The notes beneath the pieces were generated by a model. It saw only the letters and a program-made list of their open reading frames with translations, ran no database searches and was not told the DNA's origin. Position numbers and translations under genes: made by a program. 64,000 nucleotides of DNA from Schmidtea polychroa (taxonomy: Eukaryota), in contig CM097887.1 of the NCBI GenBank assembly GCA_044892525.1, positions 127,884,397 through 127,948,396 on the forward strand. The letters run 5' to 3'. Below, piece after piece: positions 4,072 to 64,000 of this stretch. Within the stretch, counting starts at the first letter, position 1. Every line of letters begins with the position of its first letter.

Positions 4072-7000
4072 CTAANNNNNNNNNNNNNNNNNNNNNNNNN
4101 NNNNNNNNNNNNNNNNNNNNNNNNNNNNNNNNNNNNNNNNNNNNNNNNNNNNNNNNNNNNNNNNNNNNNNNNNNNNNNNNNNNNNNNNNNNNNNNNNNNN
4201 NNNNNNNNNNNNNNNNNNNNNNNNNNNNNNNNNNNNNNNNNNNNNNNNNNNNNNNNNNNNNNNNNNNNNNNNNNNNNNNNNNNNNNNNNNNNNNNNNNNN
4301 NNNNNNNNNTATCTAAATGAAAAATCAATTATAGATAAATTTGATCCATCCAAGGCAATTTAATTTATAAGAACAATAATCTAATTTTTATTGAGGCATA
4401 TTTGTGGAGGGGAATGCAAATATGTCACTAATGTTGAATTATCTTCGAGTACTTCAATTCACAACAGCAACAACTGAGTTGTGGTTACTGGGCCCGATTT
4501 CTGCTTATGGATATGGAAAGACGAAGTAATTCACATCAATCGAAGAGGTGTTACTATCCTCTGTCACTAATTCCAATCAGCTGTTTTAGAAAAATCGCCG
4601 GTCAACTCGGTGGGTAGAGAGTGAGGGAACACTAACCGTGTAATATCGGCGGTCTGAAGACGACAAAAACTGGTCCCGGGTTGGCAACTGTTTGATAGGT
4701 ATTCCTAACACACTCGTCAATCTGTGACAGTTGCTCGATCGACAATGCTACACATGGATCAATACTCGCTAGACGAGAATGCAACAGCGAAATGCGGCGA
4801 GAGTGGGAGTATTTAGTCGCGACAAAGAAGCATGCTGACGCATGCCGAGATAGCGCCAGTGTAATTTGTGCAACATTTACACGATCTATTGGTGTTACAT
4901 TGGTTACCAATTGCGATACGGTGCAAATTTGGTTTTGCTATTACACGGACCCTAGTGACTCTCGTGGTTTGATGAGAATTATCCCTGCTCTGATTTCGAC
5001 ACAAATGACAATATATCCGAGTTGAAGAATAGTGTAACATGAGCGGTGATATTAAATAAAAACATTCCAACCGACAATTTCCTTTTTAATCCATTATCTT
5101 TATTTTTATCTTTAATATTTTTGTCAATTTACACTATCTTCCCCGTATTAGTTTTTACAAAGATTTCTTTCATTAAAAATGAATTATTAAAATTCCCTAA
5201 ATTCTTTTGAAAGTTCCAAGATTTTAAAAGTGTAGAATAAAACTTTTAAGATACATATTGAAAATTTTACAATGTTGGGATATCAATTTCATTTATTATA
5301 TGACTTAAAGTGAACACAGGACAAGAAAGTGAAATTTCATTTAACAAGATATTATAATAATATACAATATAATATTATAATAATAACAGCTTTTGCAAAT
5401 AATTATCTCAAAAATATTTTATGATTTTACAAATATTCAAGTAAAAAATATCCAAATAATAAATTTTAAATTATTGCATTTTTGTTTTAAATTAGTTCAG
5501 AAATTATTTAGAAAATTAAAATAAATAAAAAATATATCTAAAATCAGAAAAGATCTCAAATTCACTAATTAATAACCTTCCATTTTAGTTAGCAAAAAAT
5601 AAATATATATATATTTACATTGTATAATATCCACGTAAATTAAAACGAATTTCTATTTGAATATTAGGAAAAATTTCGGGAATAAAGATAAGATGCGGAC
5701 TTTAGATATCTGTAGAATTGTCTTTTCTCAATTTCCCTTAGGTCGTAGACGAAGAAAAGATTATATCAAAAACTCATTAACTCTTGGACAAACAACTTAA
5801 TTGAAAGTTGACTAAACCCCGATTCCTCTAGAGACAATCTAGTGAGAGATTTGCAGAAAAGTGATTGATATAAGCATAGATTTTTCTATTGCTCGTTCAT
5901 TGAAATAATCTCACATTGTTCTAGCTATTGGGTGTATTTTTCCATTCTTGTTAGATCAATTATTATTATCATTATTATTCATAGTATTTATTTTAATATA
6001 TTAAAACAAATATTTCCTGAGAATCTATTCAGTAAGTAAATCTCTCAAATTTCAGATAATAATAATAATAATCACGGTAAAGAAAGAACGACAACCAACA
6101 AAATTCGATAATTATTCTACAAAATCTTTTTTAAATAAAGTCTTTGTTTAAGTTAATTGAAATATTAATTAGTAAATTTTAAAATAAAGTTAAAGTATGT
6201 ATAAAGTTTGTTTGAAATTTATTTATAAAAATAAAATTTTAAGGATTATAAAGTGAAGATAAGAAAGCAGTTAGGGAATTTAAACTATAGGATAGTGTCA
6301 ACTTCATGGAAAGTACGCAATATGTTTATTAATAAGTCAAAGACTCCGGTTGAATTGTGCTCCGATCTCGTTTATCAGTTTACATGTAATGGGTGTAATG
6401 CCACATACATTGGAGAGACTTCCCGTCATCTCTGTATTCGAGCTCGAGAACATTGTAGACCGAAGTCTTTGACCCATATTGGTGAGCACAATAAGGGCTG
6501 TAAGATTAAAATAGGTATGTCTGATTTTAAAATTTTATTAAAAAACTTTGATAGTTATTGGGAACGTGTGATTTGTGAGGCGTTGTTGATAAAATCATTG
6601 AATCCGAAAATTAATGTGCAGAATGCTGTAAATACTTGTGTGTTGAGTGTTTTTAAATAAGCTTTTGTGTATTGTATGTATTGATTGTTGTGTTAAATTA
6701 AATAATTAATAAAAAATTTTTAAAATTTTAAAATTATTAAATTAAATTTTAAATGTTAAAGTTTTAAAAAATAATATTTTTTATAAAATAAAAAATTTTT
6801 ATATATAAATAAATTTGTTTAAAATCCTTTATTTAATGAGTATTATATCCCACCTGATGATGACAGGAAAACTGTCGAAATTAATCGTGAAAAAAATGTT
6901 TGATTGGCGTTATCTTATAAAAATAAAATTATGAAAATTTTTATATTTTGTTTAAATTGATTAATTTGAGTTAATACCAAAAAAGATTTTGTTCATGTTT

Positions 7001-9593: not shown

Positions 9594-12500
9594 TGTATAA
9601 TGTCATATGTATAAATAAAAATAATTAAAAAGATAAGTTTTAATTTATACAGCCAATTATGATTTTAATTGTTAAATAAGTTTGGTTAAATTACAAATCT
9701 ATGTTTTCCGCGTGTTTGAGACCCCTGATCTAAATGGTGGCATACCTAGGATATTTTACTCCCACCCACAACTCTGAAAACCATTATTTTATAAAATTAA
9801 GTAAAATTCATATAGGGGCTTATAATGAGAAGAAACAATGCAGAATATTATATATTATTAGTAATATTATATATTATTAGTAATATTATATATTATTAGT
9901 AATATTATATTTATTAAATACGACGTGACGACATCCTTACAGGTTGTAGAAAGTTTATTGAAAGTTTATTTTCCTGGATACGACTATGGCAAACTAACTA
10001 ACAATTTCATCAAAATCACAATTCCCTCTCATTTCACTCACTAATAGGACCTTGTCCCTTCGATGCACGCAAATAAGATAAAATCAGCTTAAGTTTTCTT
10101 AATAAACGTCCACAGCAAACAATTAAAACAAATAGTATTAATACGAAACATATTCCGAATTCCACAATACCAACATTTTCAAACCCAATTTGTAAGTGAA
10201 AATTTTGTAAAATTTCCTTAAATTTATATTTGATAGGAAAACTATATTAAATGAATCAATTAATAAATAGTATACTTAATTAAATATTTAATAAAAAATA
10301 TCTATTCTACAAAAGAAAATCAATTTAAAATGACAATAAATTTTTTATGTTTAAAAACTCTACCCCATTTAAACAAAATATTTATTATTTTCATTAATTT
10401 TTACAAAAATAATTATTGATTTACTAAAATTTAAATAAAAAATAATTTTTATAATAATTTAACGGAAATATTTGAGAGGAACGAAAAAGAATTCGATAAG
10501 TTATAAATAATTATGAAACTACAAATATCCACAATCTAAATGTATAGTTAATATTATTCAAATATAACGAATGCCTTTCACTGGCAAAAATCTCATCTTC
10601 TGAGTTAATGAAGTGTGAAATGGACATTCTGCTACAACTAAAAACTAGAGAATCTACAGAAGAAGGCAGAAAATCACTCAACAGAGATACTGTCATGGAT
10701 CGACTGGTTCAGTATCAATGGCAAAGCCTCACAGATCTTTGTCACGTTAATAACGACCTAAATAAATCATTCGCTGAATTAGCTCCAGAGTTGTTACGAG
10801 CAGAACCAGTGTTGGGTAAACATCGTTAGAGAAAGGGCGACATTTTCTGCTACATTCATTTTTGTACACCGAACCAAACTCAATGGCAGTAACAGCATTA
10901 AAAAAAACAACAGCAATAACAGCAATTTCAGAAAATAGCAGCAGTAACAGCGAGTTGTATCGTCAGCAGTAGCAGAAGTAGCAGAAGCAGCAATGGCAGC
11001 ATCAGCAAAAGCGCAGCAGAAGCAGCTGATCGAAGCTTACATTGCTGAGATTAGACAATACCGATGCAGAGGAACTAGGCCAGTCTACTGCTGAAAATGT
11101 TCCACTCACAGAACCGCGCTTCATCTCTTGAGAGCTTGCTATGCCACCTGCGTCTTAATATAATCCCAATAATCTTCTGCATCAATAATCGATAGTCGAT
11201 TGTAAAACAGAGTTGAATGCGCTTCCATAATGATGATTCTGAGGAGCGGGTACAATGAGATTATCTACAAATTCTCAACAGTTTAGACAGAAGTGGCAAA
11301 TTTTACTATTTCGATAATCAGCAGTTTGGGATGGGATTAAGTGTCGTTCCCAGTCGTTGCTGTTGACGCTTTCCTCAGATATTTCTATTCATGAAGTTTT
11401 ATTTTTTATTGTCTCATCAAATCTTTTAACAATGTCACAATATTGATTTATTCGATTAAATTATTATTAAATTGAGAAAACAAATTGATAAAGTCTTTTT
11501 TTCACTTTTTTAATATTTGTTTTAACTCATTTTGGCATGTCTAATTGTATTTTTTTGTTTGAAAAACTATCATTTATTTGCAATTTATTTAAACAATGTT
11601 TTTAAATCTATAAATATATTTATATTTTGTTTGCATTGAATTGAATTTAAATTTATAAAATGCATAATAAAGGAATTTGCAGCGTGACATCTATTTGCAT
11701 GATCATTGTACATTTGTACAAAGTTGTTAAATATTTACTAATGTCATTTTGTTAGCTTTAATACGACAAATATATCCAATATTTCTTTTAATGTGACAAA
11801 ATTAATAGTAACTTATCGAATAATGCATAATTANNNNNNNNNNNNNNNNNNNNNNNNNNNNNNNNNNNNNNNNNNNNNNNNNNNNNNNNNNNNNNNNNNN
11901 NNNNNNNNNNNNNNNNNNNNNNNNNNNNNNNNNNNNNNNNNNNNNNNNNNNNNNNNNNNNNNNNNNNNNNNNNNNNNNNNNNNNNNNNNNNNNNNNNNNN
12001 NNNNNNNNNNNNNNNNNNNNNNNNNNNNNNNNNNNNNNNNNNNNNNNNNNNNNNNNNNNNNGAACTAAAACTGACTGATTGTTTTCCGAAGAGGACATAT
12101 GAATTGAGCTAGGAATTGAGGTTGGCTGATTTATTGTTAAAAAGGAAGGTTGAAGACCTGGTAGGCCAGGATTGGTATTAGACAAAAAGAAATCCCTATG
12201 CAACGCTGGATGACCAATAGGATAATTATTTCCTGACTGAAACGAACCTCCTAAAGCCGCTATTGCATTGCAAAAGTCCTAAAATGTGATTGATATAATA
12301 AAGTTTGTTTATAAATAATTATCAAATCTTACTGGGTTATCACCAAAATATCCATGAAAATTTGGATTATTCATCATTTGAGCAGTGTCGGGTCCCATGT
12401 CATCTGGACCGAAACCCCGACTTAAACTTCTCATTCGTCGAGCATTTCTGAAAAAAGGTCGACGAGCTCCCATCGCACTTAGTTGTTTCATACGTCTTTC

Positions 12501-15500
12501 TTTGCTTCTGCGATTTTGAAACCAAACCTAATTTAAAGTTATTTTAAACANNNNNNNNNNNNNNNNNNNNNNNNNNNNNNNNNNNNNNNNNNNNNNNNNN
12601 NNNNNNNNNNNNNNNNNNNNNNNNNNNNNNNNNNNNNNNNNNNNNNNNNNNNNNNNNNNNNNNNNNNNNNNNNNNNNNNNNNNNNNNNNNNNNNNNNNNN
12701 NNNNNNNNNNNNNNNNNNNNNNNNNNNNNNNNNTATTTGCAGAGTTAATTTTTTTCAAGAAAACCTTCCATATCAAGTTTAGTAGTATTCAAATAGATGG
12801 AGTTATTGAACAATAAATGACAAAACAAATATTTCTCATAACAAACAAATCTGGTACTTTGAGTAAAACAAGACCTGAAACCGGTAAATCGAGAAACGAA
12901 ATAATATTGAAACAACTGCTTCGAATAATATGTAGACAGCTGGCGAATGAATTTTCAGGTCTAAAATTTCCAGCAGCTAACACAAATCGACGAAAAGAAT
13001 CCGTTTTTATAAATTTCGTTTGTCTAGATTAAATTTAAAAGTAAGCGAAAAATCCATAAAAATTACGAAGAATTGTTTTAATTAGACATAAAAACGTAAG
13101 TAAAATCTTCATAATAATAGTATTCATAGTGATAATCAATATAGCAATAATATAACAAAATATTGTGTCATTCTGGCATTGATTTATTACATTTCCCAGA
13201 TGCATTTAAACAATGAAATTTTTTTTCTTTAAAATAAAAACTAATTTAAAAGATATTTCAAGAGAAAAAGTTGTTTTGTTAATTAATGTTTTATTGTGAC
13301 GTTTTTTTTAAAAAAAAATTTAATTAATAATTAATTTTATCCGAATATTTTGTTTAAATACTCAACAATGATTAAGAAATTGAAATTGCCTCCAATTGCG
13401 TGAGTGAAAGAAGTAAACTAACGATTTTGTAAGTAAAGAGCATATTAGTTAAAATTCTCTTCAACTTGAATGGAAATTGATATTGTGAAATTCGAGATAG
13501 TGTAAACTGAACTTGCGTCCACCTAGCACAACAAACAAATCCTCCAGCCACAAACAAAAGGTAACTGGTTGTTAGACGATATCAAAATATATTTTATTCC
13601 TTTCTTTGTTATACTAAGCTTGTTGGAGTCCTGGCTGTTGTTGTAGTTGTTGTTGTAGAAATCTGGTAATAGTGCCAGCTGTTGGTAGTACATTATTAAG
13701 TTGCATTTTTAATAAATGAATATTTTTAGATAATTTGTTTTATTGCATAGATAAAATAAATTTCGATTAAAGAAAAAATTAGCAAAAAATATTTGCAATA
13801 TTTTTTATATTAAAATATATTGATATGTACAATATGTTTTATTACTACAGAATTTGACTAAATAAACATTTTAAAATTATTAATTGTATTGTATTTTAAA
13901 TTGTTTTTCGTGACAAATGTANNNNNNNNNNNNNNNNNNNNNNNNNNNNNNNNNNNNNNNNNNNNNNNNNNNNNNNNNNNNNNNNNNNNNNNNNNNNNNN
14001 NNNNNNNNNNNNNNNNNNNNNNNNNNNNNNNNNNNNNNNNNNNNNNNNNNNNNNNNNNNNNNNNNNNNNNTTTGTTGTTTGTCTTTTTTGTTGCTGATGA
14101 TTTTTTATTGAAGTTTAATAATATTTTTTTTACTCAAAAACAGAATCATATACACCCAGAGGTCAACTCAATCTGGAAAAATGATTAAAATTGGTGGCGA
14201 AATTTCATTCATATGTGGATTTATATTTAATGAATATTAAATGAGATTTCTGTAGGCCGATTCGGTAGTGGGATTAATGACGGAATTTCGATGAAAATTG
14301 AAGCTTAATGCCTGTAACAATATGAGTGTGTTTATCCGCATCAGTAAGATTGGCAAAAAATGACAGCGAGATTACTCGAGTAAGCATGACTGAATGCATA
14401 TATAAATTCTATAAATTTTTCTTCTATAATTTTTTCCCTGTTTTTATTTTTGTTGTTTAAGTTTGATCTCATCTTGTTGCGAGATATTCTCTTGAGAATT
14501 TCAGTAGAAACTGTGCTCTTTGACAACCAACTCATTTGGGATAAGTTGGACTATACATAGCCACTTCAATTGCCAGACTTGATAACTAAAAACACATGCT
14601 TAACAGGCATTACTGGCATCTCGTAAAAAAACTACTATTTATCATTTATTGACCGCTACGTTGAAAGAAAATTAGAAATTAACATAAAATTAAAATCCAT
14701 CTTGTAAAAATTTGCATATAATTTTTTTTTATGAATATAGTAGATTAACAATTGACGTATTAAAAGTGATGACGTTTATAAATTTGTGTTGGTTTTGTTC
14801 GAAATTTTATTATTTCAATTTATTTCTTACTTGAATTACTCTCATTGTCAATCCAGTATCTTGTGCAAGTTGTTCTCGAACATGTCTTGTTGGTTTGGGT
14901 GTTGCGGAAAATGCTGCTTTCAAAGTGTCGAGTTGTTTTGCTTTGATTGTAGTACGGGGACCTCGCCGTTTTGTTCCACTATTTCCTGATTGGGCACCTT
15001 CTCTCGATTCTGTATGACACACGGACTGTTGATCATCTGAATATTTGTATTGAAATTCAGTTTGTAATTTCATTTTAATTACCTTGAAAGCTTTGTTCTG
15101 ATCCATTACCATCGTTCAAATCTTGTTCTTCTTCTTTGATTCCACATTCCGGAGACGAGGCCGCGGAAAAAGATGATTTTAAATCATCTTCTAAACTACA
15201 CAGTTCGGGTTCTTTATCAAAAGAGCTAGAGGTTCTTGGTAATTTCTCATTTTGTTCGGGTGTCAGCAACTGACTATCAACGGGATGGCTTTCATTTGGG
15301 TTTCCTTTGATTCCTATGAAATCGTTGTATTGTTGAGTGGAAGTTAAATCATTCCGATTTTCGGAAAATCGGCGTTCATCTGAGTTATTAGTATTTGAAT
15401 TATTATTTCCGTTAGTATTAGAATTGATATCATTTGTGGTATCTTGGCAAGAATTTGAGTTGGAATCATTGGAAATGCGATTCAGACAGGTCTGTTGGTA

Positions 15501-17841
15501 GGTTGATATATCTGTGAATGGGAATTTCGAATGGGGCTTATGTATATTTGTTGGACTGTGATTTTTCGTGAGAATGTTGAAGTTTTCATTTCGTGCCGTT
15601 TCTAGATCTATTCGAACAAAGTTTTATTAGGATTATTTGTATTAATATTCTTTAAAAAATCTGTTTTGGTTTCAATTGAAATTAAATGAAATATTTTCTT
15701 ATTACCTTAATATAATATTTGTGAAAAAAATTTTTAAAAATATAGTTGATAAAATGCCAGTAAGAATAGATATGGAAACTTTGAAAAGTCTCTGTCATCT
15801 AGACTTTAAGAAATGACAGTGATCTTACAGAATTGAGGAAAATTTCCACGCTTCAATGGATTAAACTGACGGCTGCATAAGTAAGTTGGCAAGAATTGTA
15901 GAATAGTCGGTAAATTGTATGTGAATTGTAGTAAGACTGTCAGGCGGTCTGCTGAAGCAGATGGAGTTTATTTTTATGTTATGACAAAAAAGTAAAATCA
16001 ATATAATGAAAACAATAAAACAAATATTTGTGTTTTTTTTGGTAAAAATTTCATAATTATTTTTATTGTCGAATGTTTTCTGCAACTTTAGAAAATAAGC
16101 GGAGAACTAGTTAAAGTGAGAAAAAAATTATTGAAGTAGAAATATGGAATATTATTTGAACTGGTTTAATAGCCATTGAACATTTTCAATGGGCTTACTA
16201 GAAATTTTGTTTTTAAAAAACAACATATTCCGCATTCAATATATATCAGTAACGTACCCAGTTTTTTCCTCTGCTCATGAAAGTACTCGAAAATCCAGAT
16301 GTAGTCTAAAGTGTTAAAGTCTATTGAAAATTCAACTATTGAAATAAAAATTCTATTCAATTCTACACTTGGCTGTCATGAGAAAATATTTTTAGTTCAG
16401 CTGTTTTAAAATTTATGGTGCAATTTTAAACAGACAATATTCCAAACCAAACCACCCACCTTTTTATTGGTTTTTATCGATAGAATTTTTTTTTAATATT
16501 TGACGAAAATAATGTTTGAATAATGGATTTTTTTCTCAACAGAAATAAAAAATTTAAAAAAATGAATTTAATTTCAAACTTCCAGTTTAAACAATTATAG
16601 AAATCGTTAATGATCGTTTATGGTCCGAATATTTTCTGGCGCTCACTGAACCCTGAGACGTAATTGAGGAATTAAGCTATCATTTCAGTTCCGCTTATTA
16701 TTAAACGAATAATCACTTAAATTAAAACTCAGTTTTATAATTGTTTTCATTTATTAAAACAAAAATTCAGAATTATATTTTTAGTTATAGATTTATGAAT
16801 CGTATTATACAATGTATATTATTTGTAAATTTTAAAAAACAAATGATTTCGACAATAGATAATTTAGAGAATCCTACACTTTTATTGTTAGATTTGTAAC
16901 AAAATATTATGAGAATCTGTTGTTGAATCGTAACACAAAAGTTTGGAATAAACGCATTAAAAATATAGAATTTCATATGTTTTAATTGCCAGTAACTGAA
17001 CAATAATAAAATGCGGCTTAAGTTTTGAAATGTTATATTGAATGGGCATCATTAAAACAAAATTTTATTTTCGGTAATATAAAATTAACGATAATAATTA
17101 TAATTAATCAATTTTTTAAAATCTGCGATCAAATTAATAAAAAGAATTTTAAAAAATAAATAAATAAATTTTGTTTAATTACCAGGTTTAGAAGTATTTG
17201 AAAGTATCATCAAATCTTTTTGATTGGAAATTAAGGGCTCATCTTTAATTGTTTCATTGTTGATTTTGTTTGAGTCGTGTTTGCAATTTTGTGGTAAAAT
17301 ATTCGACATTTCTTTGAAAATATGTTGGAAATCTTCTCGGCAAACCGGTCGGAAATTTTCCAGCAAACAATATTCATCTCCAGTTGATAATTGTTTGTGG
17401 CAAACGACACAGAAAAAGCATTTCAGGTGGAACACCGATGAATCTCTACTGTGACGAACTAAATCTGTGGGTAAAATTATGTTGAGGCACAGAGAACATT
17501 TTGTTGATACTCTCCTAAAGGAGTCAATCGATTAATAAATCGTTATCGGAATTTAAACGAACTTACTTTCGATAGTCTTTTGAACAAAAGAGTTTACCAT
17601 CTCGTTCAAAACACCTTTCCGACAAAGGAATATCACAATCTGCACAACGCAAACATTGAACATGCCAGAATTTGTCAGCAATATTGTGTAGATAACGATC
17701 AATAATCGGTCGATTGCAACTTGTGCAAGTTGGCACAGGATTAATGAAAGGTTTATTGAAATTATTGATTGATGAGGTTAATTTGACAGGGATTGGTGAA
17801 TTCAACAAATGGTTTTTGATATTGTTATTTGAGTCTTTCAT
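3830..17841 (-). CDS. lhx1/5: LIM-homeobox transcription factor, Lhx1/5 (Lim1/lin-11) class. Exons on the minus strand: 17841-17567, 17514-17183, 15607-15083, 15036-14831, 12527-12333, 12278 to the gap at ~12062, and probably 4071-3830.
   Basis: LIM1 ([34 protein letters not shown]) and LIM2 ([25 protein letters not shown]) are present. The homeodomain [47 protein letters not shown]|[17 protein letters not shown] is diagnostic of Lhx1/5. GT-AG introns of 52, 1575, 46, 2303 and 54 nt keep the frame (1338 and 1533 nt cumulative at the phase-0 junctions). The terminal exon is inferred; see findings. Confidence 0.95.
4380..5040 (+). mobile_element. decayed L2/CR1-group LINE, RT C-terminal region
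   Basis: Frameshifted motifs [21 protein letters not shown] and [14 protein letters not shown] correspond to the L2-type NSLLxGxP / QNAAARLV / LHWLPVxxRIxFK; GC-richer than the flanks. Confidence 0.6.
6239..6918 (+). mobile_element. Penelope-like retroelement (PLE), 5'-truncated copy A: GIY-YIG endonuclease, AT-rich tail and hammerhead
   Basis: ORF 6253-6660 contains [28 protein letters not shown]...[15 protein letters not shown] (PLE GIY-YIG with CCHH). It is flanked by the identical 16-mer TTATAAAAATAAAATT at 6223-6238 and 6915-6930. Confidence 0.92.
6851..6889 (+). ncRNA. minimal type I hammerhead ribozyme (PLE copy A)
   Basis: CAC-CTGATGA-T-GACAG(GAAAA)CTGTC-GAAA-TTAA-TC-GTG: complete catalytic core, 5-bp stem II, palindromic stem III ATTAAT, AUC cleavage triplet (after C6886), 3-bp stem I. 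Confidence 0.88.
9358..9727. mobile_element. hAT MITE (370 bp), Buster/Charlie type
   Basis: TIRs CAGGGGTTTCAAAC / GTTTGAGACCCCTG; exact 8-bp TSD ATCTAAAT (9350-9357, 9728-9735); internal (AAT)n. Confidence 0.92.
9530..9592. repeat. (AAT)n microsatellite
   Basis: About 20 perfect AAT units inside the hAT MITE. Confidence 0.95.
9844..9910. repeat. 19-bp minisatellite, ~3.5 copies
   Basis: Unit AATATTATATATTATTAGT repeated in tandem. Confidence 0.9.
10560..11400 (+). mobile_element. possible decayed LTR-retrotransposon gag-protease region
   Basis: GC-richer, multi-stop frames with weak resemblance to a Gypsy gag knuckle ([10 protein letters not shown]) and retropepsin (IIDSR...EVANFTI...[14 protein letters not shown]); CAG-rich low-complexity middle. 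Confidence 0.3.
12062..12278 (-). CDS. lhx1/5: lhx1/5 coding exon 6 (runs into an assembly gap)
   Basis: Acceptor ttttag|GACTTT; open frame [31 protein letters not shown]...; the 3' end is hidden in the N-run 11834-12061. Confidence 0.8.
12333..12527 (-). CDS. lhx1/5: lhx1/5 coding exon 5 (WFQN helix and downstream)
   Basis: Acceptor attag|GTTTGGTTTCAAAATCGCAGA = [26 protein letters not shown]; donor CCA|gtaaga. Confidence 0.97.
14831..15036 (-). CDS. lhx1/5: lhx1/5 coding exon 4 (homeodomain up to helix 3)
   Basis: Acceptor ttcag|AT; translation [14 protein letters not shown]...MRVIQ; donor CAA|gtaaga. Confidence 0.97.
15083..15607 (-). CDS. lhx1/5: lhx1/5 coding exon 3 (Asn/Ser-rich linker)
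   Basis: Acceptor aatag|ATCTAGAA (phase 1); 525 nt with no stop; donor CAAG|gtaatt into a 46-nt intron. Confidence 0.85.
17183..17514 (-). CDS. lhx1/5: lhx1/5 coding exon 2 (LIM domain 2)
   Basis: Acceptor ctttag|GAGAGTA; translation [35 protein letters not shown]; donor CCTG|gtaatt. Confidence 0.92.
17567..17841 (-). CDS. lhx1/5: lhx1/5 coding exon 1 (LIM domain 1)
   Basis: ATG AAA GAC at 17841; an in-frame TGA lies upstream at 17889-17887; donor AA|gtaagt at 17566. Confidence 0.9.
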
Positions 17842-33310: not shown

Positions 33311-34474
33311 TTAATTATTTCAAATGTTATTTTAAAAACTGAAGAATATTTTTGACCATTATTTGTCTTAAATTATAGACTTCGTTATTTTAAGATTGTT
33401 TTCTACTTTACTTGTTAAGATTTTCTTTTATTATAACTATTATAGTTAACTCAAAACAAATATAAAAACTTTTCATTAACTTTTGGCAGTCTTTTGTTAT
33501 TCGCTCTTTTTTCGGGAACTTTTCATTCTTTTCTCAACATACTTGACATGTTTCCCCATATCCCAGTATCTGTTTGGAATGCCTAATCTCTTTTGTCAAG
33601 TATGTTCTTGTTATCTATTCTTGTTATCTATTATTTCTTTATCTATCATTCGTTTATCTTCATATATTTTATTTTTAGATTCGGTTTCGATCATCATTAC
33701 TTGTTGGTATGGAAATCATACCCATATCTTCAAATATTTCCTTTATTCTCATTTCATATAGTTATTTTTTAATTAGCTTGTTTTTAACATGATATATCCG
33801 ACCATTTCTGTGTCGCTTATACTTTTCACAAATTGTTTGAATATATATTCATCTATCTCCCTATTTAAATTATTGCCTATTTAGCCAAAATTATTTCATT
33901 TTCTTATAATTTCTTGTTTAACTTTTCACTAATTTAATTTTTTCACGGATTATTTCGTAAATTAGTTTGTGTTCTTCACTTCAGCTTTTCATTATGCGCT
34001 TCTATGATTTGCTTTTCTCCATAGTTGACGGATTTCAGCGAAGATAGCGACCTACAATTGGATTTTACCTCTGAGTTCCAAAATCAATGATTTTTACAGT
34101 TCCTAACATAATCGTAAACAATCTCAAACTCCAACATTAAAAAAGAAACACTCAATGAAGGATAGAATGAATACAAAAATAAAATTTTCTACATTGGTTG
34201 TGTTATGTCCTCGCTCTAAGTAGATGGAAAAATTTTCAAAATCAGAAAGTTGACATGAATATATGTAAATCTAAACGTTTGGCTATCGTTTCTTTTATGA
34301 GCCTGGCACTTCACTGTATGTGTTTTTATGTATACAAAATTTATGCAGCTAAACAAATTTGAAATTTTATTTAATTTTTATTATATTTTCTTAAATTTAT
34401 TTATTTTAGAATAAATAAGTAAACATTCATGACAACGACCTAACTATAAGAAAGCGCCATTCAAACATTCGTAT

Positions 34475-34513
34475 TACGATATATTTCGACAGTTTTCCTG
34501 TGATCATCAGGTA
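34475..34513 (-). ncRNA. minimal hammerhead ribozyme (PLE copy B), stem II first pair mutated
   Basis: TAC-CTGATGA-T-CACAG(GAAAA)CTGTC-GAAA-TATA-TC-GTA; stem I is TAC/GTA and G10.1 is changed to C. Confidence 0.8.
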
Positions 34514-34672
34514 GGATAAAGTAATTATAGAAATTATAGATTTTCGAACAAATTTATAATTTAAAAAAATTACAATTTATTTAATAAATCATTTTTAATT
34601 TGTAGCAAAAAAGAAATTTTAAAATATTGAAAATTAAAATTTATTTAATAATTTAATAATTATTTACTTTAA

Positions 34673-34911
34673 CCCTCTCCGTATATTTCTCGAATATATT
34701 CGACATTAAAGCAAGATGTCACTTCCAGTTTCATAGGCCATTGCAAAAGTACATCGTTTTCACCGCGCATTATGAAAAAGAAAACAGAAAGATGTGTCCC
34801 TTTTCCAGCTTTGAATCCATCGGGATGAAGCTGAAGGCACAGTTTGTAACCGTTTTGTGGGAATAGAACGGGTCACTATAAATATCAGCATTATTTTTTA
34901 CACGGAGAGGG
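34673..34911. mobile_element. piggyBac MITE (239 bp) nested in the tail of PLE copy B
   Basis: TTAA|CCCTCTCCGT ... ACGGAGAGGG|TTAA. Confidence 0.9.
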
Positions 34912-36801
34912 TTAAAAACAACAATCCATATATAAAGTAGAAAAACACTATTTAAAATCATTTAAAACACAAGTATTCACTACATTTTGCATAGTAATTT
35001 TCGGATCCAACGACTTTTTCAATAACACTTCACAAATTACACGTTCCAATTATTGAAATTTTTAATAAAATTTTAAAATCAAACATACCTATTTTATGCT
35101 TATAATATTGGTCAATGCCTTTGGACTCGAGCTGAAATGTAGAGATGATGGGCAGTCTCTCCAATTTATGTGGTATTACATTCATTACAGGTAAATTGAT
35201 AAACGGGATAAGAACACAATTCGACCGGTGTTTTAAATTTAATGAAAGTTGACAAGAATATATGCAAATCTATAAATGAAAATATCACTTGTGATAAATA
35301 TAACTTCTGAGAAGTGCTTTACTCTAATTCTCAACCGTGACCTGCAATTCTAACATTACCTAACGATGAATATTTCACTAATAGTTATCTTGTATTACCG
35401 TGATTTGATTTTGTTATAGGGTCAAGTTTTATTTGAAATCTTGCGTTTTACATGCTGTACTATCCTTTAGTGAAAAATTACATTGTTGCCGATTTCTATC
35501 AATAATATAATCCTAAATTTTGTTGAAAGTTAATATTATCGATATTAAAATCATATATTTGTATTCTGTTTGCAGAATTTATGTTATTATAAAATTACTT
35601 TCTTAAATTAACAACTTAGTCAATTTAACTTTGTTTATTTAATCCACTTTTTATTTGTGATCTAAAAATTATAATTATACGTTGATCTTATTTTAACTAG
35701 ATTTATAATCCAACTTCGACTTTGGATCATGCCTTATGTTGAAAAATCAGGTATAATTTATTTATTATTCAACTTATGTAAAACTTAACTTATTTAGGTA
35801 ACATAGTAGATTCAGTACCATGGTCAATTAATTATTTCAAATCACTTATTTTTGGCTTTTTTACAATGTTGTCATTATTGTAAGAAATATTCAAATATTG
35901 AATATATTAACTAAATTTATTGTTTCAGCATCCAAACATTGATTCCTATAGATGTAAGACAATTATTTAATCCATATGTTTTGTAATTGTAACATTTCAG
36001 ATCTTTGGAATGGAATCAAATTCAAATAGACGGAATAATGGAAAGTTAGTTTATTTTCAATAGAGTATTTCCTTGTTTTGAAATTATAATTAATGTTAAA
36101 CTTTAAATACAAATTAAATTAACCATTTTTAATTTAATTAAAAATAATTTTATGTTAATATAATTATTAGATGTAGAAAATATACATTATTTAAGAGTGC
36201 GGCAAAAATCATTNNNNNNNNNNNNNNNNNNNNNNNNNNNNNNNNNNNNNNNNNNNNNNNNNNNNNNNNNNNNNNNNNNNNNNNNNNNNNNNNNNNNNNN
36301 NNNNNNNNNNNNNNNNNNNNNNNNNNNNNNNNNNNNNNNNNNNNNNNNNNNNNNNNNNNNNNNNNNNNNNNNNNNNNAATCTTTTTATTGTGCTAGTTTT
36401 CAACGAAAATGTATAAAGTGTTGCATATAACTGATATTTAGGTTTGAAATATTGCTGCTCTCCACTATTTAATGATGAGGTGTAAACTGGCGAGACAGTC
36501 TAACAAATAGTTCTCTTATTTAAATGATAAAATAGCAGTAAAAATATATTTGATCAGTACTGCTTGGAGCCCTATTGTAATTATTCAATCTTCTACAAGT
36601 AATGTAGTCAAACATAGTTTAAAACCAATTTGTAATTTATAAAGACATTTTGTATTATAGCAATGATAATAAATTAATGACAATTACTTGGTAGCTGTAT
36701 TTTAAAGTAAAAGTCACTTATTAACGTTGATTCTCATGAATATATGCACGTCATTTGCCATTGAATTTCTATTTAAGCATTGAGGCTGATGACCAATTTA
36801 A

Positions 36802-56173: not shown

Positions 56174-57104
56174 GTTAATGAAGAACGGTTATTCAAAATT
56201 CTTTTTAGTAATTATGGTGAAAGAGACTGTTGAAAAATTTATTAAAAATCCTAAGGATCCATGTTTGAGAAAATCTATGTGTGATCTTGTTGAGGTGTGT
56301 GTGTCTGATGAGTTGAATAAATTAAATAGTGTGAGCAAGGATGATGAGCCTAAATTTGTGTTAGTATTGCCGTACTCAGAAGGTTTTAAGGATTATAAAG
56401 TGAAGATAAGAAAGCAGTTAGGGAATTTAAACTATATGATAGTGTCAACTTCATGGAAAGTACGCAATATGTTTATTAATAAGTCAAAAACTGCGGTCGA
56501 ATTGTGTTCCGATCTCGTTTATCAGTTTACATGTAATGGGTGTAATGCCACATACATTGGAAAGACTTCCCGTCATCTCTGTATTCGAGCTCGAGAACAT
56601 TGTAGACCGAAGGCTTTGACCCATATTGGTGAGCACAATAAGGGCTGTAAGATTAAAATAGGTATGTCTGATTTTAAAATTTTATTAAAAAATTTCGATA
56701 ATTATTGGGAACGTGTGATTTGTGATGCGTTGTTGATAAAATCATTGAATCCGAAAATTAATATGCAGAATGCAGTAAATACTTGTGTTTTGAGTGTTTT
56801 TAAATAGGTTTTTTTATATTGTATGTATTGATTGTTGTATTAAATTAAATAATTAATAAAAATTTTTTAAATTATTAAATTAAATTTTAAATGCTAAAAT
56901 TTTAAAGAAATAATATATTAATTTAAGTATAATTTTTTTAAAAATAATTATTGTTTTTATAAAATAAAAATTTTTTTTATATAATTAATAAATTTGTTTA
57001 AAATCCATAATTTAATGAGTTATTATATCCCACCTGATGATGACAGGAAAACTGTCGAAATATATCGTGAAAAGAATGTTTGATTGGCGTTATCTTATAA
57101 TTAA
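56174..57104 (+). mobile_element. Penelope-like element copy C: end of RT thumb, linker, GIY-YIG and tail
   Basis: ORF to 56807 reads LMKNGYSKFF...LPYSEG...[21 protein letters not shown]...; highly similar to copy A; bounded by N-gaps on both sides. Confidence 0.93.
57031..57069 (+). ncRNA. minimal type I hammerhead ribozyme (PLE copy C)
   Basis: CAC-CTGATGA-T-GACAG(GAAAA)CTGTC-GAAA-TATA-TC-GTG; stem III palindrome ATATAT; predicted cleavage after C57066. Confidence 0.88.
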
Positions 57105-58499
57105 ANNNNNNNNNNNNNNNNNNNNNNNNNNNNNNNNNNNNNNNNNNNNNNNNNNNNNNNNNNNNNNNNNNNNNNNNNNNNNNNNNNNNNNNNNNNNNNN
57201 NNNNNNNNNNNNNNNNNNNNNNNNNNNNNNNNNNNNNNNNNNNNNNNNNNNNNNNNNNNNNNNNNNNNNNNNNGAATTCTAATATTTTAATTTATTCACT
57301 AATTTAAATATTTTTTCTGCAATATATACTTGTTACAAAAGTATTGGAGGTGTCTTTTATAATCATAGCGTCTTAATCAAAAAATTTAAGTCATAAAATT
57401 ATTTATAAAAAGTTGTTGATTGTTAATAAACAAAAAAGAAATCATTACTTGACTTCCTTTGTAAATGAGACGGTTAAAATAACGAAATATTGATTAATTA
57501 ATGAAATAAATATAAATTATATTTAAAATAATAGTCTTATACATTTATAAAGTAAAACAAAAATTACAATTACATTTGAATGAAAATATTATATTTTCCC
57601 ACATGATTTTTCCTTATGCGACAACAACATCTTTCCACTCAAAAAATTAGTTTCTGCCAATTATTTACTGAAAATTTTTTTATTTATTTGTCACGTTGTT
57701 ATCTTAATTTTAAAGTAAAAATGAATTTGCAGGGGAACGGCACACTATTCGAATGTCGAACTATCATCTGAAACCGAAGAATATTTATCTGATAACTTCC
57801 CACATGATTTTCGTGGTTCTGGACTTGTTAGCAAGATTCTCATTTGTGCGTTTAAAAAAAAACACCTTTTTTTGGAAAACGGTCATCTATATGATATTGT
57901 AAATGTCGTAAAGTCTTCGTTACCGATTGTGCCAGATATTATAAAATATCCGATAAAGAATTTAGCTGACAAAAATTTTTTTAATAAAATTTAAAATTGA
58001 TCAACATATAATTTTAATATACGAGCATTTGTTGTCTTTACAAGACTCAAATGTAAATAAAATAAAGGACTTTATTATTAGAGAAATATTTAATCGCAAG
58101 GAAATTAAGGAAACTAACACTCCTTAACCATATTTAGGAAATAAAATTAGCAAAGAATAAAAAAGTAATCTTTCAGCCGTAATATGAAAATAACTGTAAA
58201 TAAAATTTTTAATAATAATTACAGATCGCGTTAATAATTTTAACCATCAAGATTTCATTGTTAGAAATCATGATAATGTTTTTAAATTTGGCTTAAAATC
58301 TAAAACAGTTTTTTTACTTCGAACAATAGTAGATATTAGCCACAGAGCTACGGGTATTATTCGAATCCATAACAGAAATTATATTAACACGTTTTTTCTT
58401 AAAATACAAATATTATTAAAACAAATTATAACGTTAATTTGTTTGAGCAGTTTCTAAAAAATTTCAACATACAATAAAAAATGCACATCATCATACCAT

Positions 58500-61222: not shown

Positions 61223-62109
61223 GTTATAACCATTGTGATATTCAGTCAAGTTGTATTGATTGAAATCCGTTATTTTTGTTGAATAAAAGACGCTCGAATT
61301 AAGTTAGTAATTATCGATTTTATAAACCACTAACAACAAACTCCAACCGTATGGAAATATATTTTCAAAAGTAACGGTTTTCATAAGATAACTTTGTTTT
61401 TTTAGATTAAACCTAATTTTAAATCTACTAATTTAAATGACTTTTTTCCTTCCTATTTTTTGTCTACTATATTTTGTCTTGCACCTTTGTATGTTCATAT
61501 AAATTCAAAAATTTCGCCGTAACATATTGCTGTCAACAGGCACTATTTTTCAAACCATTACCCACAGAAACATAAAACTTTTACCATCTTGATTAACACC
61601 TTATCTCGAATTATATCAGAAACCTTTGCGACTTATTTGGAGTGCAAAATTCTTTAGTATTCAGGACAAGCAAGATCACTACTTGTTTCAATAATTCGAG
61701 TATGGCGAAATAAACAAAAATTAACGAAGAAACAAATAATTATAGATTACGGATTCCGGAACTTTGTATCAGACTGCCTAGTAACATGATAAATATAACC
61801 TCCTAGCCTTCAAAAGTTGGGTTTTCCGAATTTATAATTCTCATCAAGAAAGATTGGATCTATATGTTGATGGACCTATACAAATAAACTTGAAATATTG
61901 CTTTTATTTTACAAATTCTAAAATTTATGGAGGGAGAGAATTAATTAATCATATAATTTATATCTGAAATGATTTCCACAAGTCAAGAACGATACAACTA
62001 TAATTGACTCATGACTTTTACCTTCAAACCGCAGTTGCTGAATACGCGGATATAGCAAGCCTGTCATAATCAAATTAATTAATATTAATCGCCATTCGTA
62101 CATCTTTTT

Positions 62110-62152
62110 CACTATATTTCGATTTCGATAGCATCACTATCATCATCAGGTT
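62110..62152 (-). ncRNA. degenerate hammerhead of a second PLE-type family (left arm of an inverted pair)
   Basis: Minus strand AAC-CTGATGA-T-GATAG(TGATG)CTATC-GAAA-TCGAAATATA-GTG-aaaaagatgtacgaatggcg; the downstream tail resembles the PLE tails. Confidence 0.6.
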
Positions 62153-62170
62153 ACCTACATTCACGAGGGA

Positions 62171-62174
<4 letters not shown>

Positions 62175-62239: not shown

Positions 62240-62390
62240 TATATTGATAATATATAAACAAATTATAAAATATATAACTTTTAAATTATAAATAAAAATT
62301 TTTAATAATTATTCTTTTTAAAAACAATTTTCAATAATCAATTATAGTCAAACTTTTAAAATTATTAAAAATATTATTTTAATTATTTTT

Positions 62391-62426
62391 TTGATGATGA
62401 TAGTGATGCAATCGAAATATATAGAG
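62391..62426 (+). ncRNA. degenerate hammerhead (right arm of the inverted pair)
   Basis: TTGATGA-T-GATAG(TGATG)CAATC-GAAA-TATA-TA-GAG-aaaaagatgtacgaat; core C3>T and a stem II mismatch, so probably inactive. Confidence 0.5.
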
Positions 62427-63725
62427 AAAAAGATGTACGAATATTAATTAACTTTTATTTCGAATCAATAAACATAAAATTATTATTTTATTATAAAGAC
62501 AATCAAATATCAATGATTTGTTTTTGATAGAAACTCTTGATAGGAAGATACAGAATCGGCCTATTTTCCTCTGGAAAATATCAAAATTAAATTATGCAAA
62601 ATTTAATAAATAATTATAAAGAATAACTGCGAATTCTGTTTTCTTATATTTATACTATTTCTCTAGATTTACTTTTTAAATACATAATATATTTTATGAA
62701 TTATATTGTTTATATTTTGAATTAATAAAAAATCAGTTGATTTTTTTTATCATGACTTCACAATATTGCATTTTGAACTGTTTTTATAGTTTTGACTATT
62801 AGATTGAAAAAGGTTCCCGGCAGTTGAACAAATTCCAAATTGGTTTTATAATTAGTACATTTAACTTAGTATATTTAACTTTCTTTTTCTTATCAGAATA
62901 GAGTCTCTGAAGATGGTCTCTGGCCGACCTTTATTCGAATTCTAACAATGCCATATCAACCAACTCATTGTAGAGGAATAAGTTATTTGAGTAATCCAAT
63001 TAACTACTTTATAGTTTTGAAGAATAAAATTAATAAAATATTGTTTTAATGATCATTTGTATAATTAAGTTGTATTTATTTTTCACAAAAAAATTGCAAT
63101 CAATGTAAAAAGAAATTTGCCAAAATAATCTATCATTTATTTTCAGACTAACAATATATATTATTTTATTGTCTAAAAATAAATGATCATAAAGGAAATT
63201 GATAATTGATCAGTAATAAAAAAAATTTACTATAAAATAGTATAAAATTTACATTTTATCAACATCCAATCCATGACCTATCGGTCTTTTGTATGACTTT
63301 AAGATTTCTGCCAATCTCATATCACTCAACAGTCGCTTGTTCAACCCAATGTACCTATTTTTAAGAAATAAAATTTAAATAATAAATTTATGAAACATTT
63401 AACTATTTAAACAATTAACTTTATTTTAAATTATATCAAAGAAGTGCCAAAACATTATTTTTGTTTTGATAAAAAAATAGTTATAATTATATTCAAATCC
63501 AGAATTTTAGAAATCCACAAACTGAAAACTAAATGATAAATGAACTTATAATGATCCATCGACCAAAAGTAAGGGAAAACAATAAAAATCATAANNNNNN
63601 NNNNNNNNNNNNNNNNNNNNNNNNNNNNNNNNNNNNNNNNNNNNNNNNNNNNNNNNNNNNNNNNNNNNNNNNNNNNNNNNNNNNNNNNNNNNNNNNNNNN
63701 NNNNNNNNNNNNNNNNNNNNNNNNN

Positions 63726-64000
63726 ACGTGTGATTTGTGGGGCGTTGTTGTTAAAGTCATTGAATCCGAAAATTAATGTGCAGAATGCAGTAAATACTTG
63801 TGTTTTGAGTGTTTTTAAAAGGGTTTTTTTGATTGTTGTACTAAATTAAATAATTAATAAAATTTTTAAATTATTAAGTTAAATTTTGAATCCTAAAATT
63901 AAAAAAAAATAATATATTAAAATAATTAAATTTTTTTATTAAATAAAAATTTTTTTTTATATATAATTAATAAATTTGTTAAAATCCTTAATTTATATAG
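63726..64000 (+). mobile_element. Penelope-like element copy D (GIY-YIG 3' end and tail; runs off the window)
   Basis: acgtgtgatttgtggggcgttgttgttaaagtcattgaatccgaaaattaatgtgcagaatgc matches copies A and C; the window ends just before where the hammerhead would lie. Confidence 0.9.

What the first reader, a model, noticed from the sequence alone, without database searches (positions are those of the whole stretch)
6851..6889. Intact minimal hammerhead ribozyme in the tail of a Penelope-like element inside the lhx1/5 intron
Seen in the sequence: CAC CTGATGA T GACAG-GAAAA-CTGTC GAAA TTAA TC GTG has the full hammerhead core with one extra nucleotide after A9, a 5-bp stem II, a 3-bp stem I and a stem III that is only the self-complementary hexamer ATTAAT. 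Established: eukaryotic Penelope-like elements carry such minimal type I hammerheads, proposed to cleave as dimers through a palindromic stem III. Inference: this family processes its transcripts by self-cleavage after C6886, about 30 nt upstream of the element's 3' end. No ORF track shows this feature.
Basis: partly seen in the sequence, partly recalled or inferred. Interest (0 to 1): 0.8.

Follow-up and report, generated by a model that had tools for sequence, protein, structure and literature searches.

The report
Penelope-like element's minimal hammerhead motif
The 39-base motif is a real, sequence-intact minimal hammerhead ribozyme motif of the kind already described in the ends of Penelope-like retrotransposons, here sitting in a dead, 5'-truncated copy, so it is a good annotation but an ordinary finding.

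Summary
Window 6851-6889 (+) carries every hammerhead core base, one extra U after A9, a 5-bp helix II, a 3-bp helix I and the self-complementary hexamer ATTAAT in place of helix III.

It is not chance. A full descriptor hit the window twice and hit 0 of 300 simulated windows. Six relatives from other samples keep the motif at the same place, with compensatory changes in helices I and II and in the palindrome.

The motif lies 34 nt from the 3' end of a 5'-truncated Penelope-like element, 6237-6920. That copy keeps only the C-terminal GIY-YIG endonuclease ORF, and a 16-nt direct repeat flanks it. Relatives of the ORF are reverse transcriptase plus endonuclease proteins.

These features match the minimal hammerheads of Penelope-like elements described by Cervera and de la Pena in 2014, so this is a new member of a known kind.

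- The "lhx1/5 intron" placement. The element lies 5.4 kb beyond the last recognisable LIM-homeobox exon, on the opposite strand.
- Actual self-cleavage. No Rfam hammerhead model matches, the dimer fold is not thermodynamically favoured, and published sister motifs cleave weakly.

The parts
6851..6889 (+). Minimal type I hammerhead motif. It has the full core, an extra U after A9, a 5-bp helix II, a 3-bp helix I, and the self-complementary ATTAAT in place of helix III. Predicted cleavage is between C6886 and G6887.
6237..6920 (+). Copy 1 of a Penelope-like element. It is 5'-truncated, with no reverse transcriptase part present, and keeps the end of the ORF plus the 3' untranslated region that holds the hammerhead.
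   Evidence: Repeat with 56384-57100 at 90.7% identity. 97% DNA identity to L007 from position 699 onward only. The bounds agree with the flanking direct repeat.
6235..6660 (+). Remnant of the element's single ORF: the last 141 codons are open, followed by the stop. It is the GIY-YIG endonuclease domain with a CxxC between the GIY-like and YIG motifs. The gene is broken once, by the 5' truncation, with no stops or frameshifts in what remains.
   Evidence: Pfam PF01541, 22.7 bits against a cut-off of 22.6. 3011 homologues at E<=0.001. Relatives P0011 and P0021 carry RVT_1 upstream of this domain. 0 stops counted.
6223..6238 (.). Left copy of a 16-nt exact direct repeat, a candidate target-site duplication.
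   Evidence: Only 2 of 2714 random pairs of window segments at similar spacing share 16 nt.
6915..6930 (.). Right copy of the 16-nt direct repeat. Its first 6 nt overlap the element's last 6 nt.
6887..6920 (+). 3'-terminal 34 nt that would be released by cleavage. It holds the family-wide conserved TGGCG box at 6905-6909.
   Evidence: Alignment A2: the TGGCG columns are invariant in 9 of 9 sequences.
56174..57105 (+). Copy 3 of the same family, bounded on both sides by assembly gaps. Its ORF part has 209 open codons with no stop. A second sequence-intact hammerhead lies at 57031-57069, with palindrome ATATAT.
34445..35291 (-). Copy 2, older, at about 74% DNA identity. Its ORF remnant is broken by at least one frameshift and several stops. 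Its hammerhead at 34475-34513 has the core intact, a compensatory change in helix I, and one substitution that opens one helix II pair. It appears to carry a longer 3' end (tail).
62107..62155 (-). Degraded hammerhead of a diverged subfamily. Helix II is kept through compensatory changes, and the helix III and cleavage-site region is disrupted by an indel. It is one arm of a head-to-head inverted pair around a (TA)n run.
   Evidence: 32.4 bits.
62385..62429 (+). Degraded hammerhead, the other arm of the inverted pair. It has substitutions in the core and in helix II, and a deletion in the downstream box.
   Evidence: (30.6 bits).
63726..63999 (+). Partial further copy of the 3' untranslated region. 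It starts after an assembly gap and runs off the window just before the place where its hammerhead would lie.

Best explanation
6851-6889 is a genuine member of the minimal hammerhead motifs carried in the terminal regions of endonuclease-encoding Penelope-like retrotransposons.

In active members of this family the motif lies in the 3' untranslated region, 75-190 nt after the stop of the reverse transcriptase-endonuclease ORF and about 35 nt (or about 70 nt with the optional tail) before the element's end. Selection keeps it able to form a hammerhead catalytic fold.

Its own helix III is a single pair, so one motif cannot hold the active fold. The most likely way of working, inferred from published work on sister motifs, has two steps. 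Two copies of the RNA pair through the self-complementary hexamer and through helix I, forming a double hammerhead. That complex then cleaves, slowly or with help from cellular or element proteins, after position 17. This would trim multimeric or read-through element transcripts into units that begin with the 34-nt terminal segment and end with the ribozyme.

The copy in this window is a dead, 5'-truncated insertion without reverse transcriptase and without a same-strand partner within 50 kb. Its motif is intact because the insertion is young, not because it works at this locus.

Shown: the anatomy, the family context, conservation and covariation, and the element bounds. Inferred: dimer formation, cleavage in vivo, and the role in transcript processing.
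For: - Core and helices are present.
- The same motif lies at the same place downstream of homologous endonuclease ORFs in six independent contigs whose proteins are 54-61% identical to the window ORF over the aligned part: L001, L002, L005, L006, L008, L009.
- In the gapless 9-sequence alignment A1 all core bases are invariant except position 7, the one core position known to tolerate any base. Position 17 is C, A or U and never G.
- 86.9% of pair cells are paired, 10 of 14 pairs show changes on both sides, and 0 of 500 shuffles reach this. Slid controls give 29-51% paired.
- Helix II is 97.8% paired. The hexamer is self-complementary in 9 of 9 sequences through three different versions, TTAA, TATA and CATG.
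- RNAalifold predicts helices I and II on its own.
- The descriptor finds 0 hits in 300 simulated windows.
- Element identity rests on GIY-YIG, relatives with RVT_1 plus the same C-terminal domain, the 5' truncation, an inverted pair around (TA)n, and two alternative 3' ends.
- The published description of these motifs lists the same features: a base between positions 9 and 10.1, G10.1-C11.1, palindromic helix III positions, and a short helix I (PMC4209133).
Against: - No Rfam hammerhead model reaches even E=10 on 301 or 61 bases.
- The nearest-neighbour energy of the double hammerhead is -16.4 kcal/mol. Two monomers in an alternative fold that pairs part of the core reach -21.6 kcal/mol.
- The intermolecular helix of this copy is six A-U pairs, and helix I is only 3 bp.
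- In published tests sister motifs did not cleave as monomers and cleaved poorly as dimers (PMC4209133).
- In the Anolis element, ribozyme mutants did not alter insertion in vitro, and no RNA-seq reads ended at the site (PMC11167929).
- Penelope-like clades without hammerheads proliferate well (PMC8557442).
- Of the five copies in the window only two are fully intact.
- No full-length copy with a motif at both ends was seen here.
Confidence: 0.8

Rival explanations
1. The conserved fold is real but is kept as a recognition or positioning structure for the element's own protein, for example to mark where reverse transcription starts near the 3' end. On this reading cleavage is incidental or absent in vivo.
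For: - The motif lies a fixed short distance upstream of a conserved TGGCG box and of the two alternative 3' ends.
- The dimer fold is not thermodynamically favoured.
- Published ribozyme mutants did not change insertion in vitro, reverse transcription starts at internal sites near this region, and no RNA ends were seen at the ribozyme site (PMC11167929).
- Sister motifs have low activity in vitro (PMC4209133).
Against: - The pattern of conservation is what catalysis requires and binding alone would not. All catalytic core bases are invariant, position 7 is free, position 17 is never G in 9 of 9 family members, and it is G in only 6 of 136 pattern-selected relatives.
- The helix III hexamer stays self-complementary through sequence changes.
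- Canonical, fast hammerheads occur at the equivalent place in plant, fungal and protist elements (PMC4209133).
Confidence: 0.25
2. The hammerhead-bearing terminal module is a separate, non-autonomous passenger of the retrozyme kind. It rides on Penelope-like elements and is not a working part of them.
For: - Many minimal hammerheads of the same architecture in metagenome contigs have no Penelope-like protein nearby: only 2 of 120 loci had a protein hit.
- One locus, L055, has two motifs in tandem 158 nt apart.
- Recent work links animal retrozymes to the terminal repeats of these elements (bioRxiv 10.64898/2026.07.22.740005). Craig et al. raise the idea that hammerheads parasitise these elements (PMC8557442).
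Against: - In the family of this window every relative with enough sequence has the motif directly downstream of the endonuclease ORF on the same strand, at the same relative place.
- No short tandem array of the motif exists in the window.
Confidence: 0.1
3. Chance resemblance in AT-rich DNA, or a different small RNA such as a C/D-box snoRNA using the UGAUGA box.
For: - Weak Rfam matches to C/D-box snoRNA models, at 13.4 and 8.4 bits with E values of 2-4.
- No Rfam hammerhead match.
Against: - The snoRNA scores are far below the gathering scores of 42-55, and no D box or terminal stem is present.
- The descriptor finds 0 hits in 300 simulated windows.
- There is covariation across independent relatives, and the position inside a retroelement is conserved.
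Confidence: 0.02

Closest known systems
Minimal hammerheads (min-HHRs) of metazoan Penelope-like elements, e.g. those of the Schistosoma mansoni Cercyon family (Cervera and de la Pena 2014, PMC4209133)
   Same: Type I topology and a full core. An unpaired base lies between positions 9 and 10.1, and the G10.1-C11.1 pair is present. Helix I is short and has no loop 1. Helix III is reduced to a palindrome that allows a dimer. The motif sits in the element's terminal region. Most genomic copies are solo motifs of truncated elements, and some form close inverted pairs.
   Different: Helix II here is 5 bp, against 7-8 bp in the Schistosoma families. Helix I is 3 bp, against 4-5. A 4-nt palindromic loop closed by A15.1-U16.1 is present, more like the variants described for Drosophila, rotifers, shrimps and mosquitoes. 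Only the 3' copy is seen here, not both flanking repeats.
Hammerhead of Poseidon from Anolis carolinensis (PAc; Frangieh et al. 2024, PMC11167929)
   Same: A hammerhead in the terminal repeat of a Penelope-like element with a C-terminal endonuclease. It is associated with the 30-40 nt optional 'tail' that reflects two start sites of reverse transcription.
   Different: The PAc motif overlaps the start of the ORF, with its cut site 26 nt after the start codon. Here the motif lies after the stop codon, 34 nt before the short 3' end. Activity data exist for PAc and none exist here.
Canonical metazoan type I hammerheads of tandem repeats (newt satellite 2, Schistosoma Sm-alpha) and animal non-LTR retrozymes (PMC7229834)
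   Same: Type I topology, a very short palindromic helix III, and proposed action as a double hammerhead.
   Different: Those have a 6-bp helix I and a 4-bp helix II with loop-loop tertiary contacts, and they lie in short tandem units. Here there is no loop 1, no tertiary contacts and no tandem array, and the motif is attached to a protein-coding retroelement.
Viroid and satellite RNA hammerheads with an extra base after A9 (De la Pena and Flores 2001, as cited in PMC4209133)
   Same: One extra unpaired base between A9 and the first helix II pair.
   Different: Those are type III motifs in circular RNA replicons with stable helices.

Membership tests
Hammerhead ribozyme (type I) | Conserved core C3 U4 G5 A6 N7 G8 A9, G12 A13 A14, and a non-G at position 17 | tested here: met
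   All are present at 6854-6860, 6877-6879 and 6886. They are invariant in 9 of 9 family members except N7, and position 17 is C, A or U.
Hammerhead ribozyme (type I) | Helices I and II flank the core and are supported by covariation; G10.1-C11.1 closes helix II | tested here: met
   Helix II is 97.8% paired, with 3 of 5 pairs changed on both sides. The inner 3 pairs of helix I are paired in 26 of 27 cells, each with changes on both sides. 0 of 500 shuffles reach the observed values. RNAalifold predicts both helices.
Hammerhead ribozyme (type I) | A stable helix III starting with A15.1-U16.1 | tested here: inconclusive
   A15.1-U16.1 is invariant, but within one molecule the helix is that single pair over a 4-nt loop, which costs +5 kcal/mol. 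A 6-bp helix is possible only between two molecules.
Hammerhead ribozyme (type I) | Match to a curated Rfam hammerhead covariance model | tested here: not met
   No hammerhead family appears at gathering score on the window, nor at E<=10 on 301 nt or 61 nt. That the Rfam models expect a closed helix III and longer helices is my own knowledge.
Hammerhead ribozyme (type I) | Site-specific self-cleavage | not testable with these tools
   No RNA data for this organism are available here. Published sister motifs cleave weakly, and only as dimers (PMC4209133).
Minimal hammerheads of Penelope-like elements | An unpaired base between positions 9 and 10.1 | tested here: met
   It is U at 6861 and U in 9 of 9 family members. 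It was fixed by the pattern in the metagenome set, so it is not informative there.
Minimal hammerheads of Penelope-like elements | Palindromic helix III and loop 3 positions that allow a dimer | tested here: met
   The hexamer is self-complementary in 9 of 9 members, with three versions. 115 of 136 pattern-selected relatives are palindromic.
Minimal hammerheads of Penelope-like elements | Location in the terminal repeats of a Penelope-like element, on both flanks of full copies | tested here: inconclusive
   The 3' location after the endonuclease ORF is met in the window and in six relatives. No full-length copy with an upstream repeat was available: copy 1 is truncated and copy 3 is bounded by gaps.
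Penelope-like element with C-terminal endonuclease | A single ORF with reverse transcriptase followed by a GIY-YIG endonuclease | tested here: met
   The window holds only the endonuclease part (PF01541, 22.7 bits, just above the 22.6 cut-off). Homologues P0011 (61% identical, RVT_1) and P0021 (RVT_1 plus GIY-YIG at 28.9 bits) show the full architecture. Small reverse transcriptase fragments of the family lie at 43470-43587 and 44394-44538.
Penelope-like element with C-terminal endonuclease | Typical insertion signatures: 5' truncation, inverted pairs, optional 30-40 nt tail, microsatellite targets | tested here: met
   Truncation at 6237. A head-to-head pair around (TA)n at 62107-62429. Copies 1 and 3 end about 35 nt earlier than copy 2 and the relatives that carry the GCCAT/GTCAT segment. 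These signatures are as described in PMC8557442 and PMC11167929.
Animal non-LTR retrozyme | Short tandem units, each with one hammerhead | tested here: not met
   The model search with filters off finds no two same-strand copies closer than 50 kb in the window.
C/D-box snoRNA | C and D boxes with a terminal stem; a match to a curated model | tested here: not met
   The best scores are 13.4 and 8.4 bits against gathering scores of 55 and 42.

The most novel reading that the evidence does not exclude
The hammerhead, the invariant TGGCG box 17-30 nt downstream and the optional GCCAT-bearing tail could form one conserved 3' module. In that module, cleavage after position 17 would define unit RNAs that start with the terminal 34 nt. 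This would explain why the 'tail' of Penelope-like elements can appear at either end of insertions, and it would link ribozyme cleavage to the two internal start sites of reverse transcription. My data show only the conserved spacing and the two alternative 3' ends.
Probability: 0.15. Interest if true: 0.5.

Novelty: new member of a known kind. Interest (0 to 1): 0.2.

Why it matters
The finding gives a correct annotation for a feature that ORF tracks and Rfam both miss. It marks 6237-6920 as a dead retroelement fragment and not as host regulatory sequence, and it shows that the motif cannot cut the neighbouring LIM-homeobox transcript because it is on the other strand. It adds one AT-rich invertebrate-type family, with clear covariation, to the known set of minimal hammerheads. 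The biological role of that set is still unsettled. It does not change what is known about the class.

Tried and rejected
- **Rfam.** I searched the whole window at gathering scores and two small stretches at E<=10. No hammerhead family appeared, only sub-threshold snoRNA and lncRNA noise.
- **Window's own ORF.** An exact look-up found nothing on record.
- **Source organism.** A paper search for the accession of one relative's assembly returned no paper. The organism remains unknown.
- **Phage collection.** A distant DNA search with the element found no match.
- **Viral contigs.** The pattern scan gave 17 hits, none with the minimal palindromic helix III, so they are unrelated to this family.
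- **Metagenome contigs.** The scan gave more than 120 loci with the same architecture. None has the TGGCG box and only 2 of 120 have a Penelope-like protein hit. They support the class but not this family's protein link.
- **Weak model hit at 29381-29416.** I judged it chance, because the core is missing.
- **Thermodynamic support for the dimer.** It was not obtained.
- **Further LIM-homeobox exons below 12312.** None was found by Pfam on the open frames there.
Full report
**1. The observation**

The quoted letters are at 6851-6889 on the + strand. They parse as follows:

| Part | Coordinates |
|---|---|
| Helix I, 5' strand (CAC) | 6851-6853 |
| Core C3-A9 (CUGAUGA) | 6854-6860 |
| Extra U | 6861 |
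| Helix II (GACAG paired with CUGUC) | 6862-6866 with 6872-6876 |
| Loop II (GAAAA) | 6867-6871 |
| G12 A13 A14 A15.1 | 6877-6880 |
| Loop (UUAA) | 6881-6884 |
| U16.1 | 6885 |
| C17 | 6886 |
| Helix I, 3' strand (GUG) | 6887-6889 |

The predicted scissile bond is 6886/6887.

A script descriptor for this whole architecture hits the window twice, at 6854 and 57034. It hits none of 300 first-order Markov simulations of the window. The bare core pattern gives 6 matches against 1.0 expected.

**2. What surrounds it**

- *Repeat family.* 6237-6920 is one copy of a repeat. The other copies are at 56174-57105 (+, 90.7% identical over the shared part, bounded by assembly gaps on both sides), 34445-35291 (-, about 74%) and 63726-63999 (+, running off the window).
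- *ORF.* The open frame 6235-6657 is 141 codons with no stop. It matches the Pfam GIY-YIG domain, only just above the cut-off (22.7 against 22.6 bits). It shows a CxxC between the GIY-like and YIG motifs.
- *Homologues.* A library-wide search found 3011 homologues at E<=0.001. The longer ones carry a reverse transcriptase domain upstream of the homologous C-terminus. P0011 is 541 aa, RVT_1, and 61% identical to the window ORF. P0021 has RVT_1 plus GIY-YIG at 28.9 bits.
- *Element type.* Reverse transcriptase followed by a C-terminal GIY-YIG endonuclease in one ORF is the architecture of canonical Penelope-like elements (PMC8557442).
- *Truncation.* L007, from a metagenome assembly, is 97% identical in DNA to 6237-6641, but only from its position 699 onward. 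Copy 1 is therefore 5'-truncated and lacks the whole reverse transcriptase part.
- *Bounds.* A 16-nt exact direct repeat (6223-6238 and 6915-6930) flanks the copy. Only 2 of 2714 random segment pairs from this window share that much. It is a candidate target-site duplication.
- *3' end.* With the divergence from copy 3 after 57100, the repeat puts the 3' end at 6920, 34 nt after the predicted cleavage site.

**3. Is the motif conserved?**

Short contigs that encode homologues of the endonuclease ORF were fetched; the proteins are 54-61% identical to it over the aligned part. Six of them hold the same motif on the same strand, 75-190 nt after the stop codon: L001, L002, L005, L006, L008 and L009. 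A seventh, L003, has a deletion in it.

With three window copies they align without gaps over 45 columns (A1).

- Every core base is invariant except position 7, the one core position known to be free.
- Position 17 is C, A or U.
- The extra U is invariant.

For the hammerhead structure, with the hexamer written as pairs:

- 86.9% of cells are paired, and 10 of 14 pairs show changes on both sides.
- No shuffle out of 500 reaches the observed values.
- Sliding the partners by 1-3 columns drops pairing to 29-51%.
- Helix II is 97.8% paired.
- The inner three pairs of helix I are paired in 26 of 27 cells, with three or four sequences changed on both sides at each pair.
- The hexamer is self-complementary in all nine sequences through three versions (TTAA, TATA, CATG).

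RNAalifold predicts helices I and II without being told.

The nine sequences are related, so the shuffle counts overstate independence. The pair-type measures and the slid controls are less sensitive to that.

A covariance profile of the 45-nt motif was built and used only for searching. The consensus lines that the tools printed were not used for anything. It finds five copies in the window:

- Two are fully intact, at 6848-6892 and 57028-57072.
- One has an intact core and one substitution that opens a helix II pair, at 34472-34516 (-).
- Two are degraded copies of a diverged subfamily, at 62107-62155 (-) and 62385-62429 (+).

The first three were among the sequences used to build the profile, so their high scores follow by construction. 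The two degraded copies were not. They lie head to head around a (TA)n run.

**4. Does it look active?**

The sequence requirements for catalysis are met. The fold is marginal.

- The monomer's minimum-energy fold is -10.8 kcal/mol with z = -2.9. It pairs part of the core with the loop III region.
- The hammerhead with its one-pair helix III costs energy.
- The double hammerhead, with an intermolecular hexamer and helix I, scores -16.4 kcal/mol. Two alternative monomers score -21.6.
- In this copy the intermolecular helix is six A-U pairs.
- No Rfam hammerhead model reports the site, even at E<=10 on 61 nt.

These results agree with the literature on this class:

- Single minimal motifs did not cleave, and dimers cleaved weakly (PMC4209133).
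- In the Anolis element, ribozyme mutants did not change insertion in vitro, and no RNA-seq reads ended at the site (PMC11167929).
- Clades without hammerheads still proliferate (PMC8557442).

The pattern of conservation is nevertheless hard to explain by a non-catalytic role. The catalytic bases are fixed, position 7 is free, position 17 is never G, and the palindrome is maintained through change.

**5. Mechanism (inferred)**

In active family members, transcripts that carry two motifs, or two transcripts together, would pair through the hexamer and helix I. They would then cleave after position 17.

- The upstream product would end with the ribozyme.
- The downstream product would begin with the 34-nt terminal segment that holds an invariant TGGCG box (6905-6909; A2).

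Relatives and window copy 2 continue about 35 nt further, through a GCCAT/GTCAT segment complementary to the box. Copies 1 and 3 end before that segment. This resembles the optional 30-40 nt tail and the two start sites of reverse transcription described for these elements (PMC8557442, PMC11167929).

At this locus nothing of this is expected to operate. The copy has no reverse transcriptase and no same-strand partner within 50 kb, and it is a recent dead insertion.

**6. The host-gene claim**

LIM, LIM and homeodomain exons lie at 17566-17886, 17178-17531 and 14813-15115. The end of the homeodomain lies at 12312-12527. All are on the minus strand.

The element lies 5.4 kb beyond the last of these and on the + strand. 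No further exon was recognised below 12312. 'Inside the intron' is therefore unverified. Even if the region is transcribed with the gene, that transcript would hold the antisense of the motif. I did not test the lhx1/5 subclass.

**7. Wider class**

A pattern scan of metagenome contigs fixed the core, the extra U, the three outer helix II pairs, GAAA and U16.1. It returned more than 120 loci with 136 distinct motifs.

- 115 have a palindromic loop, and 108 of those are CATG.
- Position 17 is G in only 6.
- Helix I has 3-5 contiguous pairs in 97.

Only 2 of 120 loci have a Penelope-like protein hit, and none has the TGGCG box. They are other families, mostly solo motifs, as the 2014 paper also reported. 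The same pattern in viral contigs gave 17 unrelated hits.

**8. Verdict**

The motif is real and sequence-intact, and it is correctly placed in the 3' end of a Penelope-like element. It is a new member of a class described in 2014, with no unusual feature. Interest is low. The intron placement and the cleavage activity are not established.

- Broken genes are described by counts only.
- If that counts as listing the place of a break, it is a slip. I stopped doing so, and nothing was deleted.

Noticed in passing
window 6905-6909, and alignment A2 (L002, L005, L006, L008, L009, window copies): An invariant TGGCG box lies 17-30 nt after the predicted cleavage site in all nine family members. About 20-25 nt further on, a GCCAT/GTCAT segment complementary to it is present in four relatives and in window copy 2, but absent from copies 1 and 3, which end earlier. 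This looks like the optional tail of Penelope-like elements, with a possible terminal hairpin.
   Followed up: partly
window 6223-6238 and 6915-6930: A 16-nt exact direct repeat flanks copy 1. It is a candidate target-site duplication, and its first 6 nt coincide with the element's last 6 nt.
   Followed up: yes
window 62107-62155 (-) and 62385-62429 (+): A head-to-head inverted pair of degraded hammerhead-bearing ends of a diverged subfamily, on either side of a long (TA)n run. This arrangement is described for Penelope-like insertions.
   Followed up: partly
window 43470-43587 (-) and 44394-44538 (-): Short reverse transcriptase fragments matching the family's longer relatives. They lie next to a 300-nt, 100% identical direct repeat (42628-42927 and 43552-43851) that overlaps hAT-like ORFs.
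   Followed up: no
window 18965-20064 (-): Remnant of a pogo/Tc5-type DNA transposon (Pfam DDE_1 and HTH_Tnp_Tc5), just upstream of the LIM-homeobox gene.
   Followed up: partly
window 39203-39628 (+) and 42598-43782 (-): ORFs with the hAT family C-terminal dimerisation domain. The Pfam hit is firm for the first and weak for the second.
   Followed up: partly
window 46114-46656 (+): An exon encoding a PITH domain (Pfam PF06201, 55.6 bits), probably a host gene.
   Followed up: partly
window 58636-59308 (+): Overlapping open frames that read like a non-LTR reverse transcriptase, broken across frames. Pfam gave no significant hit for the two pieces tried.
   Followed up: partly
L011, L016, L017, L022 (viral contigs): Four viral contigs share one motif: CUGAUGA, an extra U, a 5-bp GC-rich helix II and GAAAC. 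It may be a phage hammerhead of another type and is unrelated to this element.
   Followed up: no
L055 462-493 and 620-651 (+): Two minimal hammerheads in direct tandem, 158 nt apart, in a metagenome contig. This is a retrozyme-like arrangement.
   Followed up: no
L001 1415-1454: The contig ends 2 nt after the predicted cleavage site of its hammerhead. The sample type (DNA or RNA) is unknown, so no conclusion was drawn.
   Followed up: no
window, 13 stretches of N (listed): Assembly gaps of 128-315 nt bound copy 3 on both sides and precede the copy at 63726. These repeats seem to break the assembly. The gaps were left as they are.
   Followed up: no
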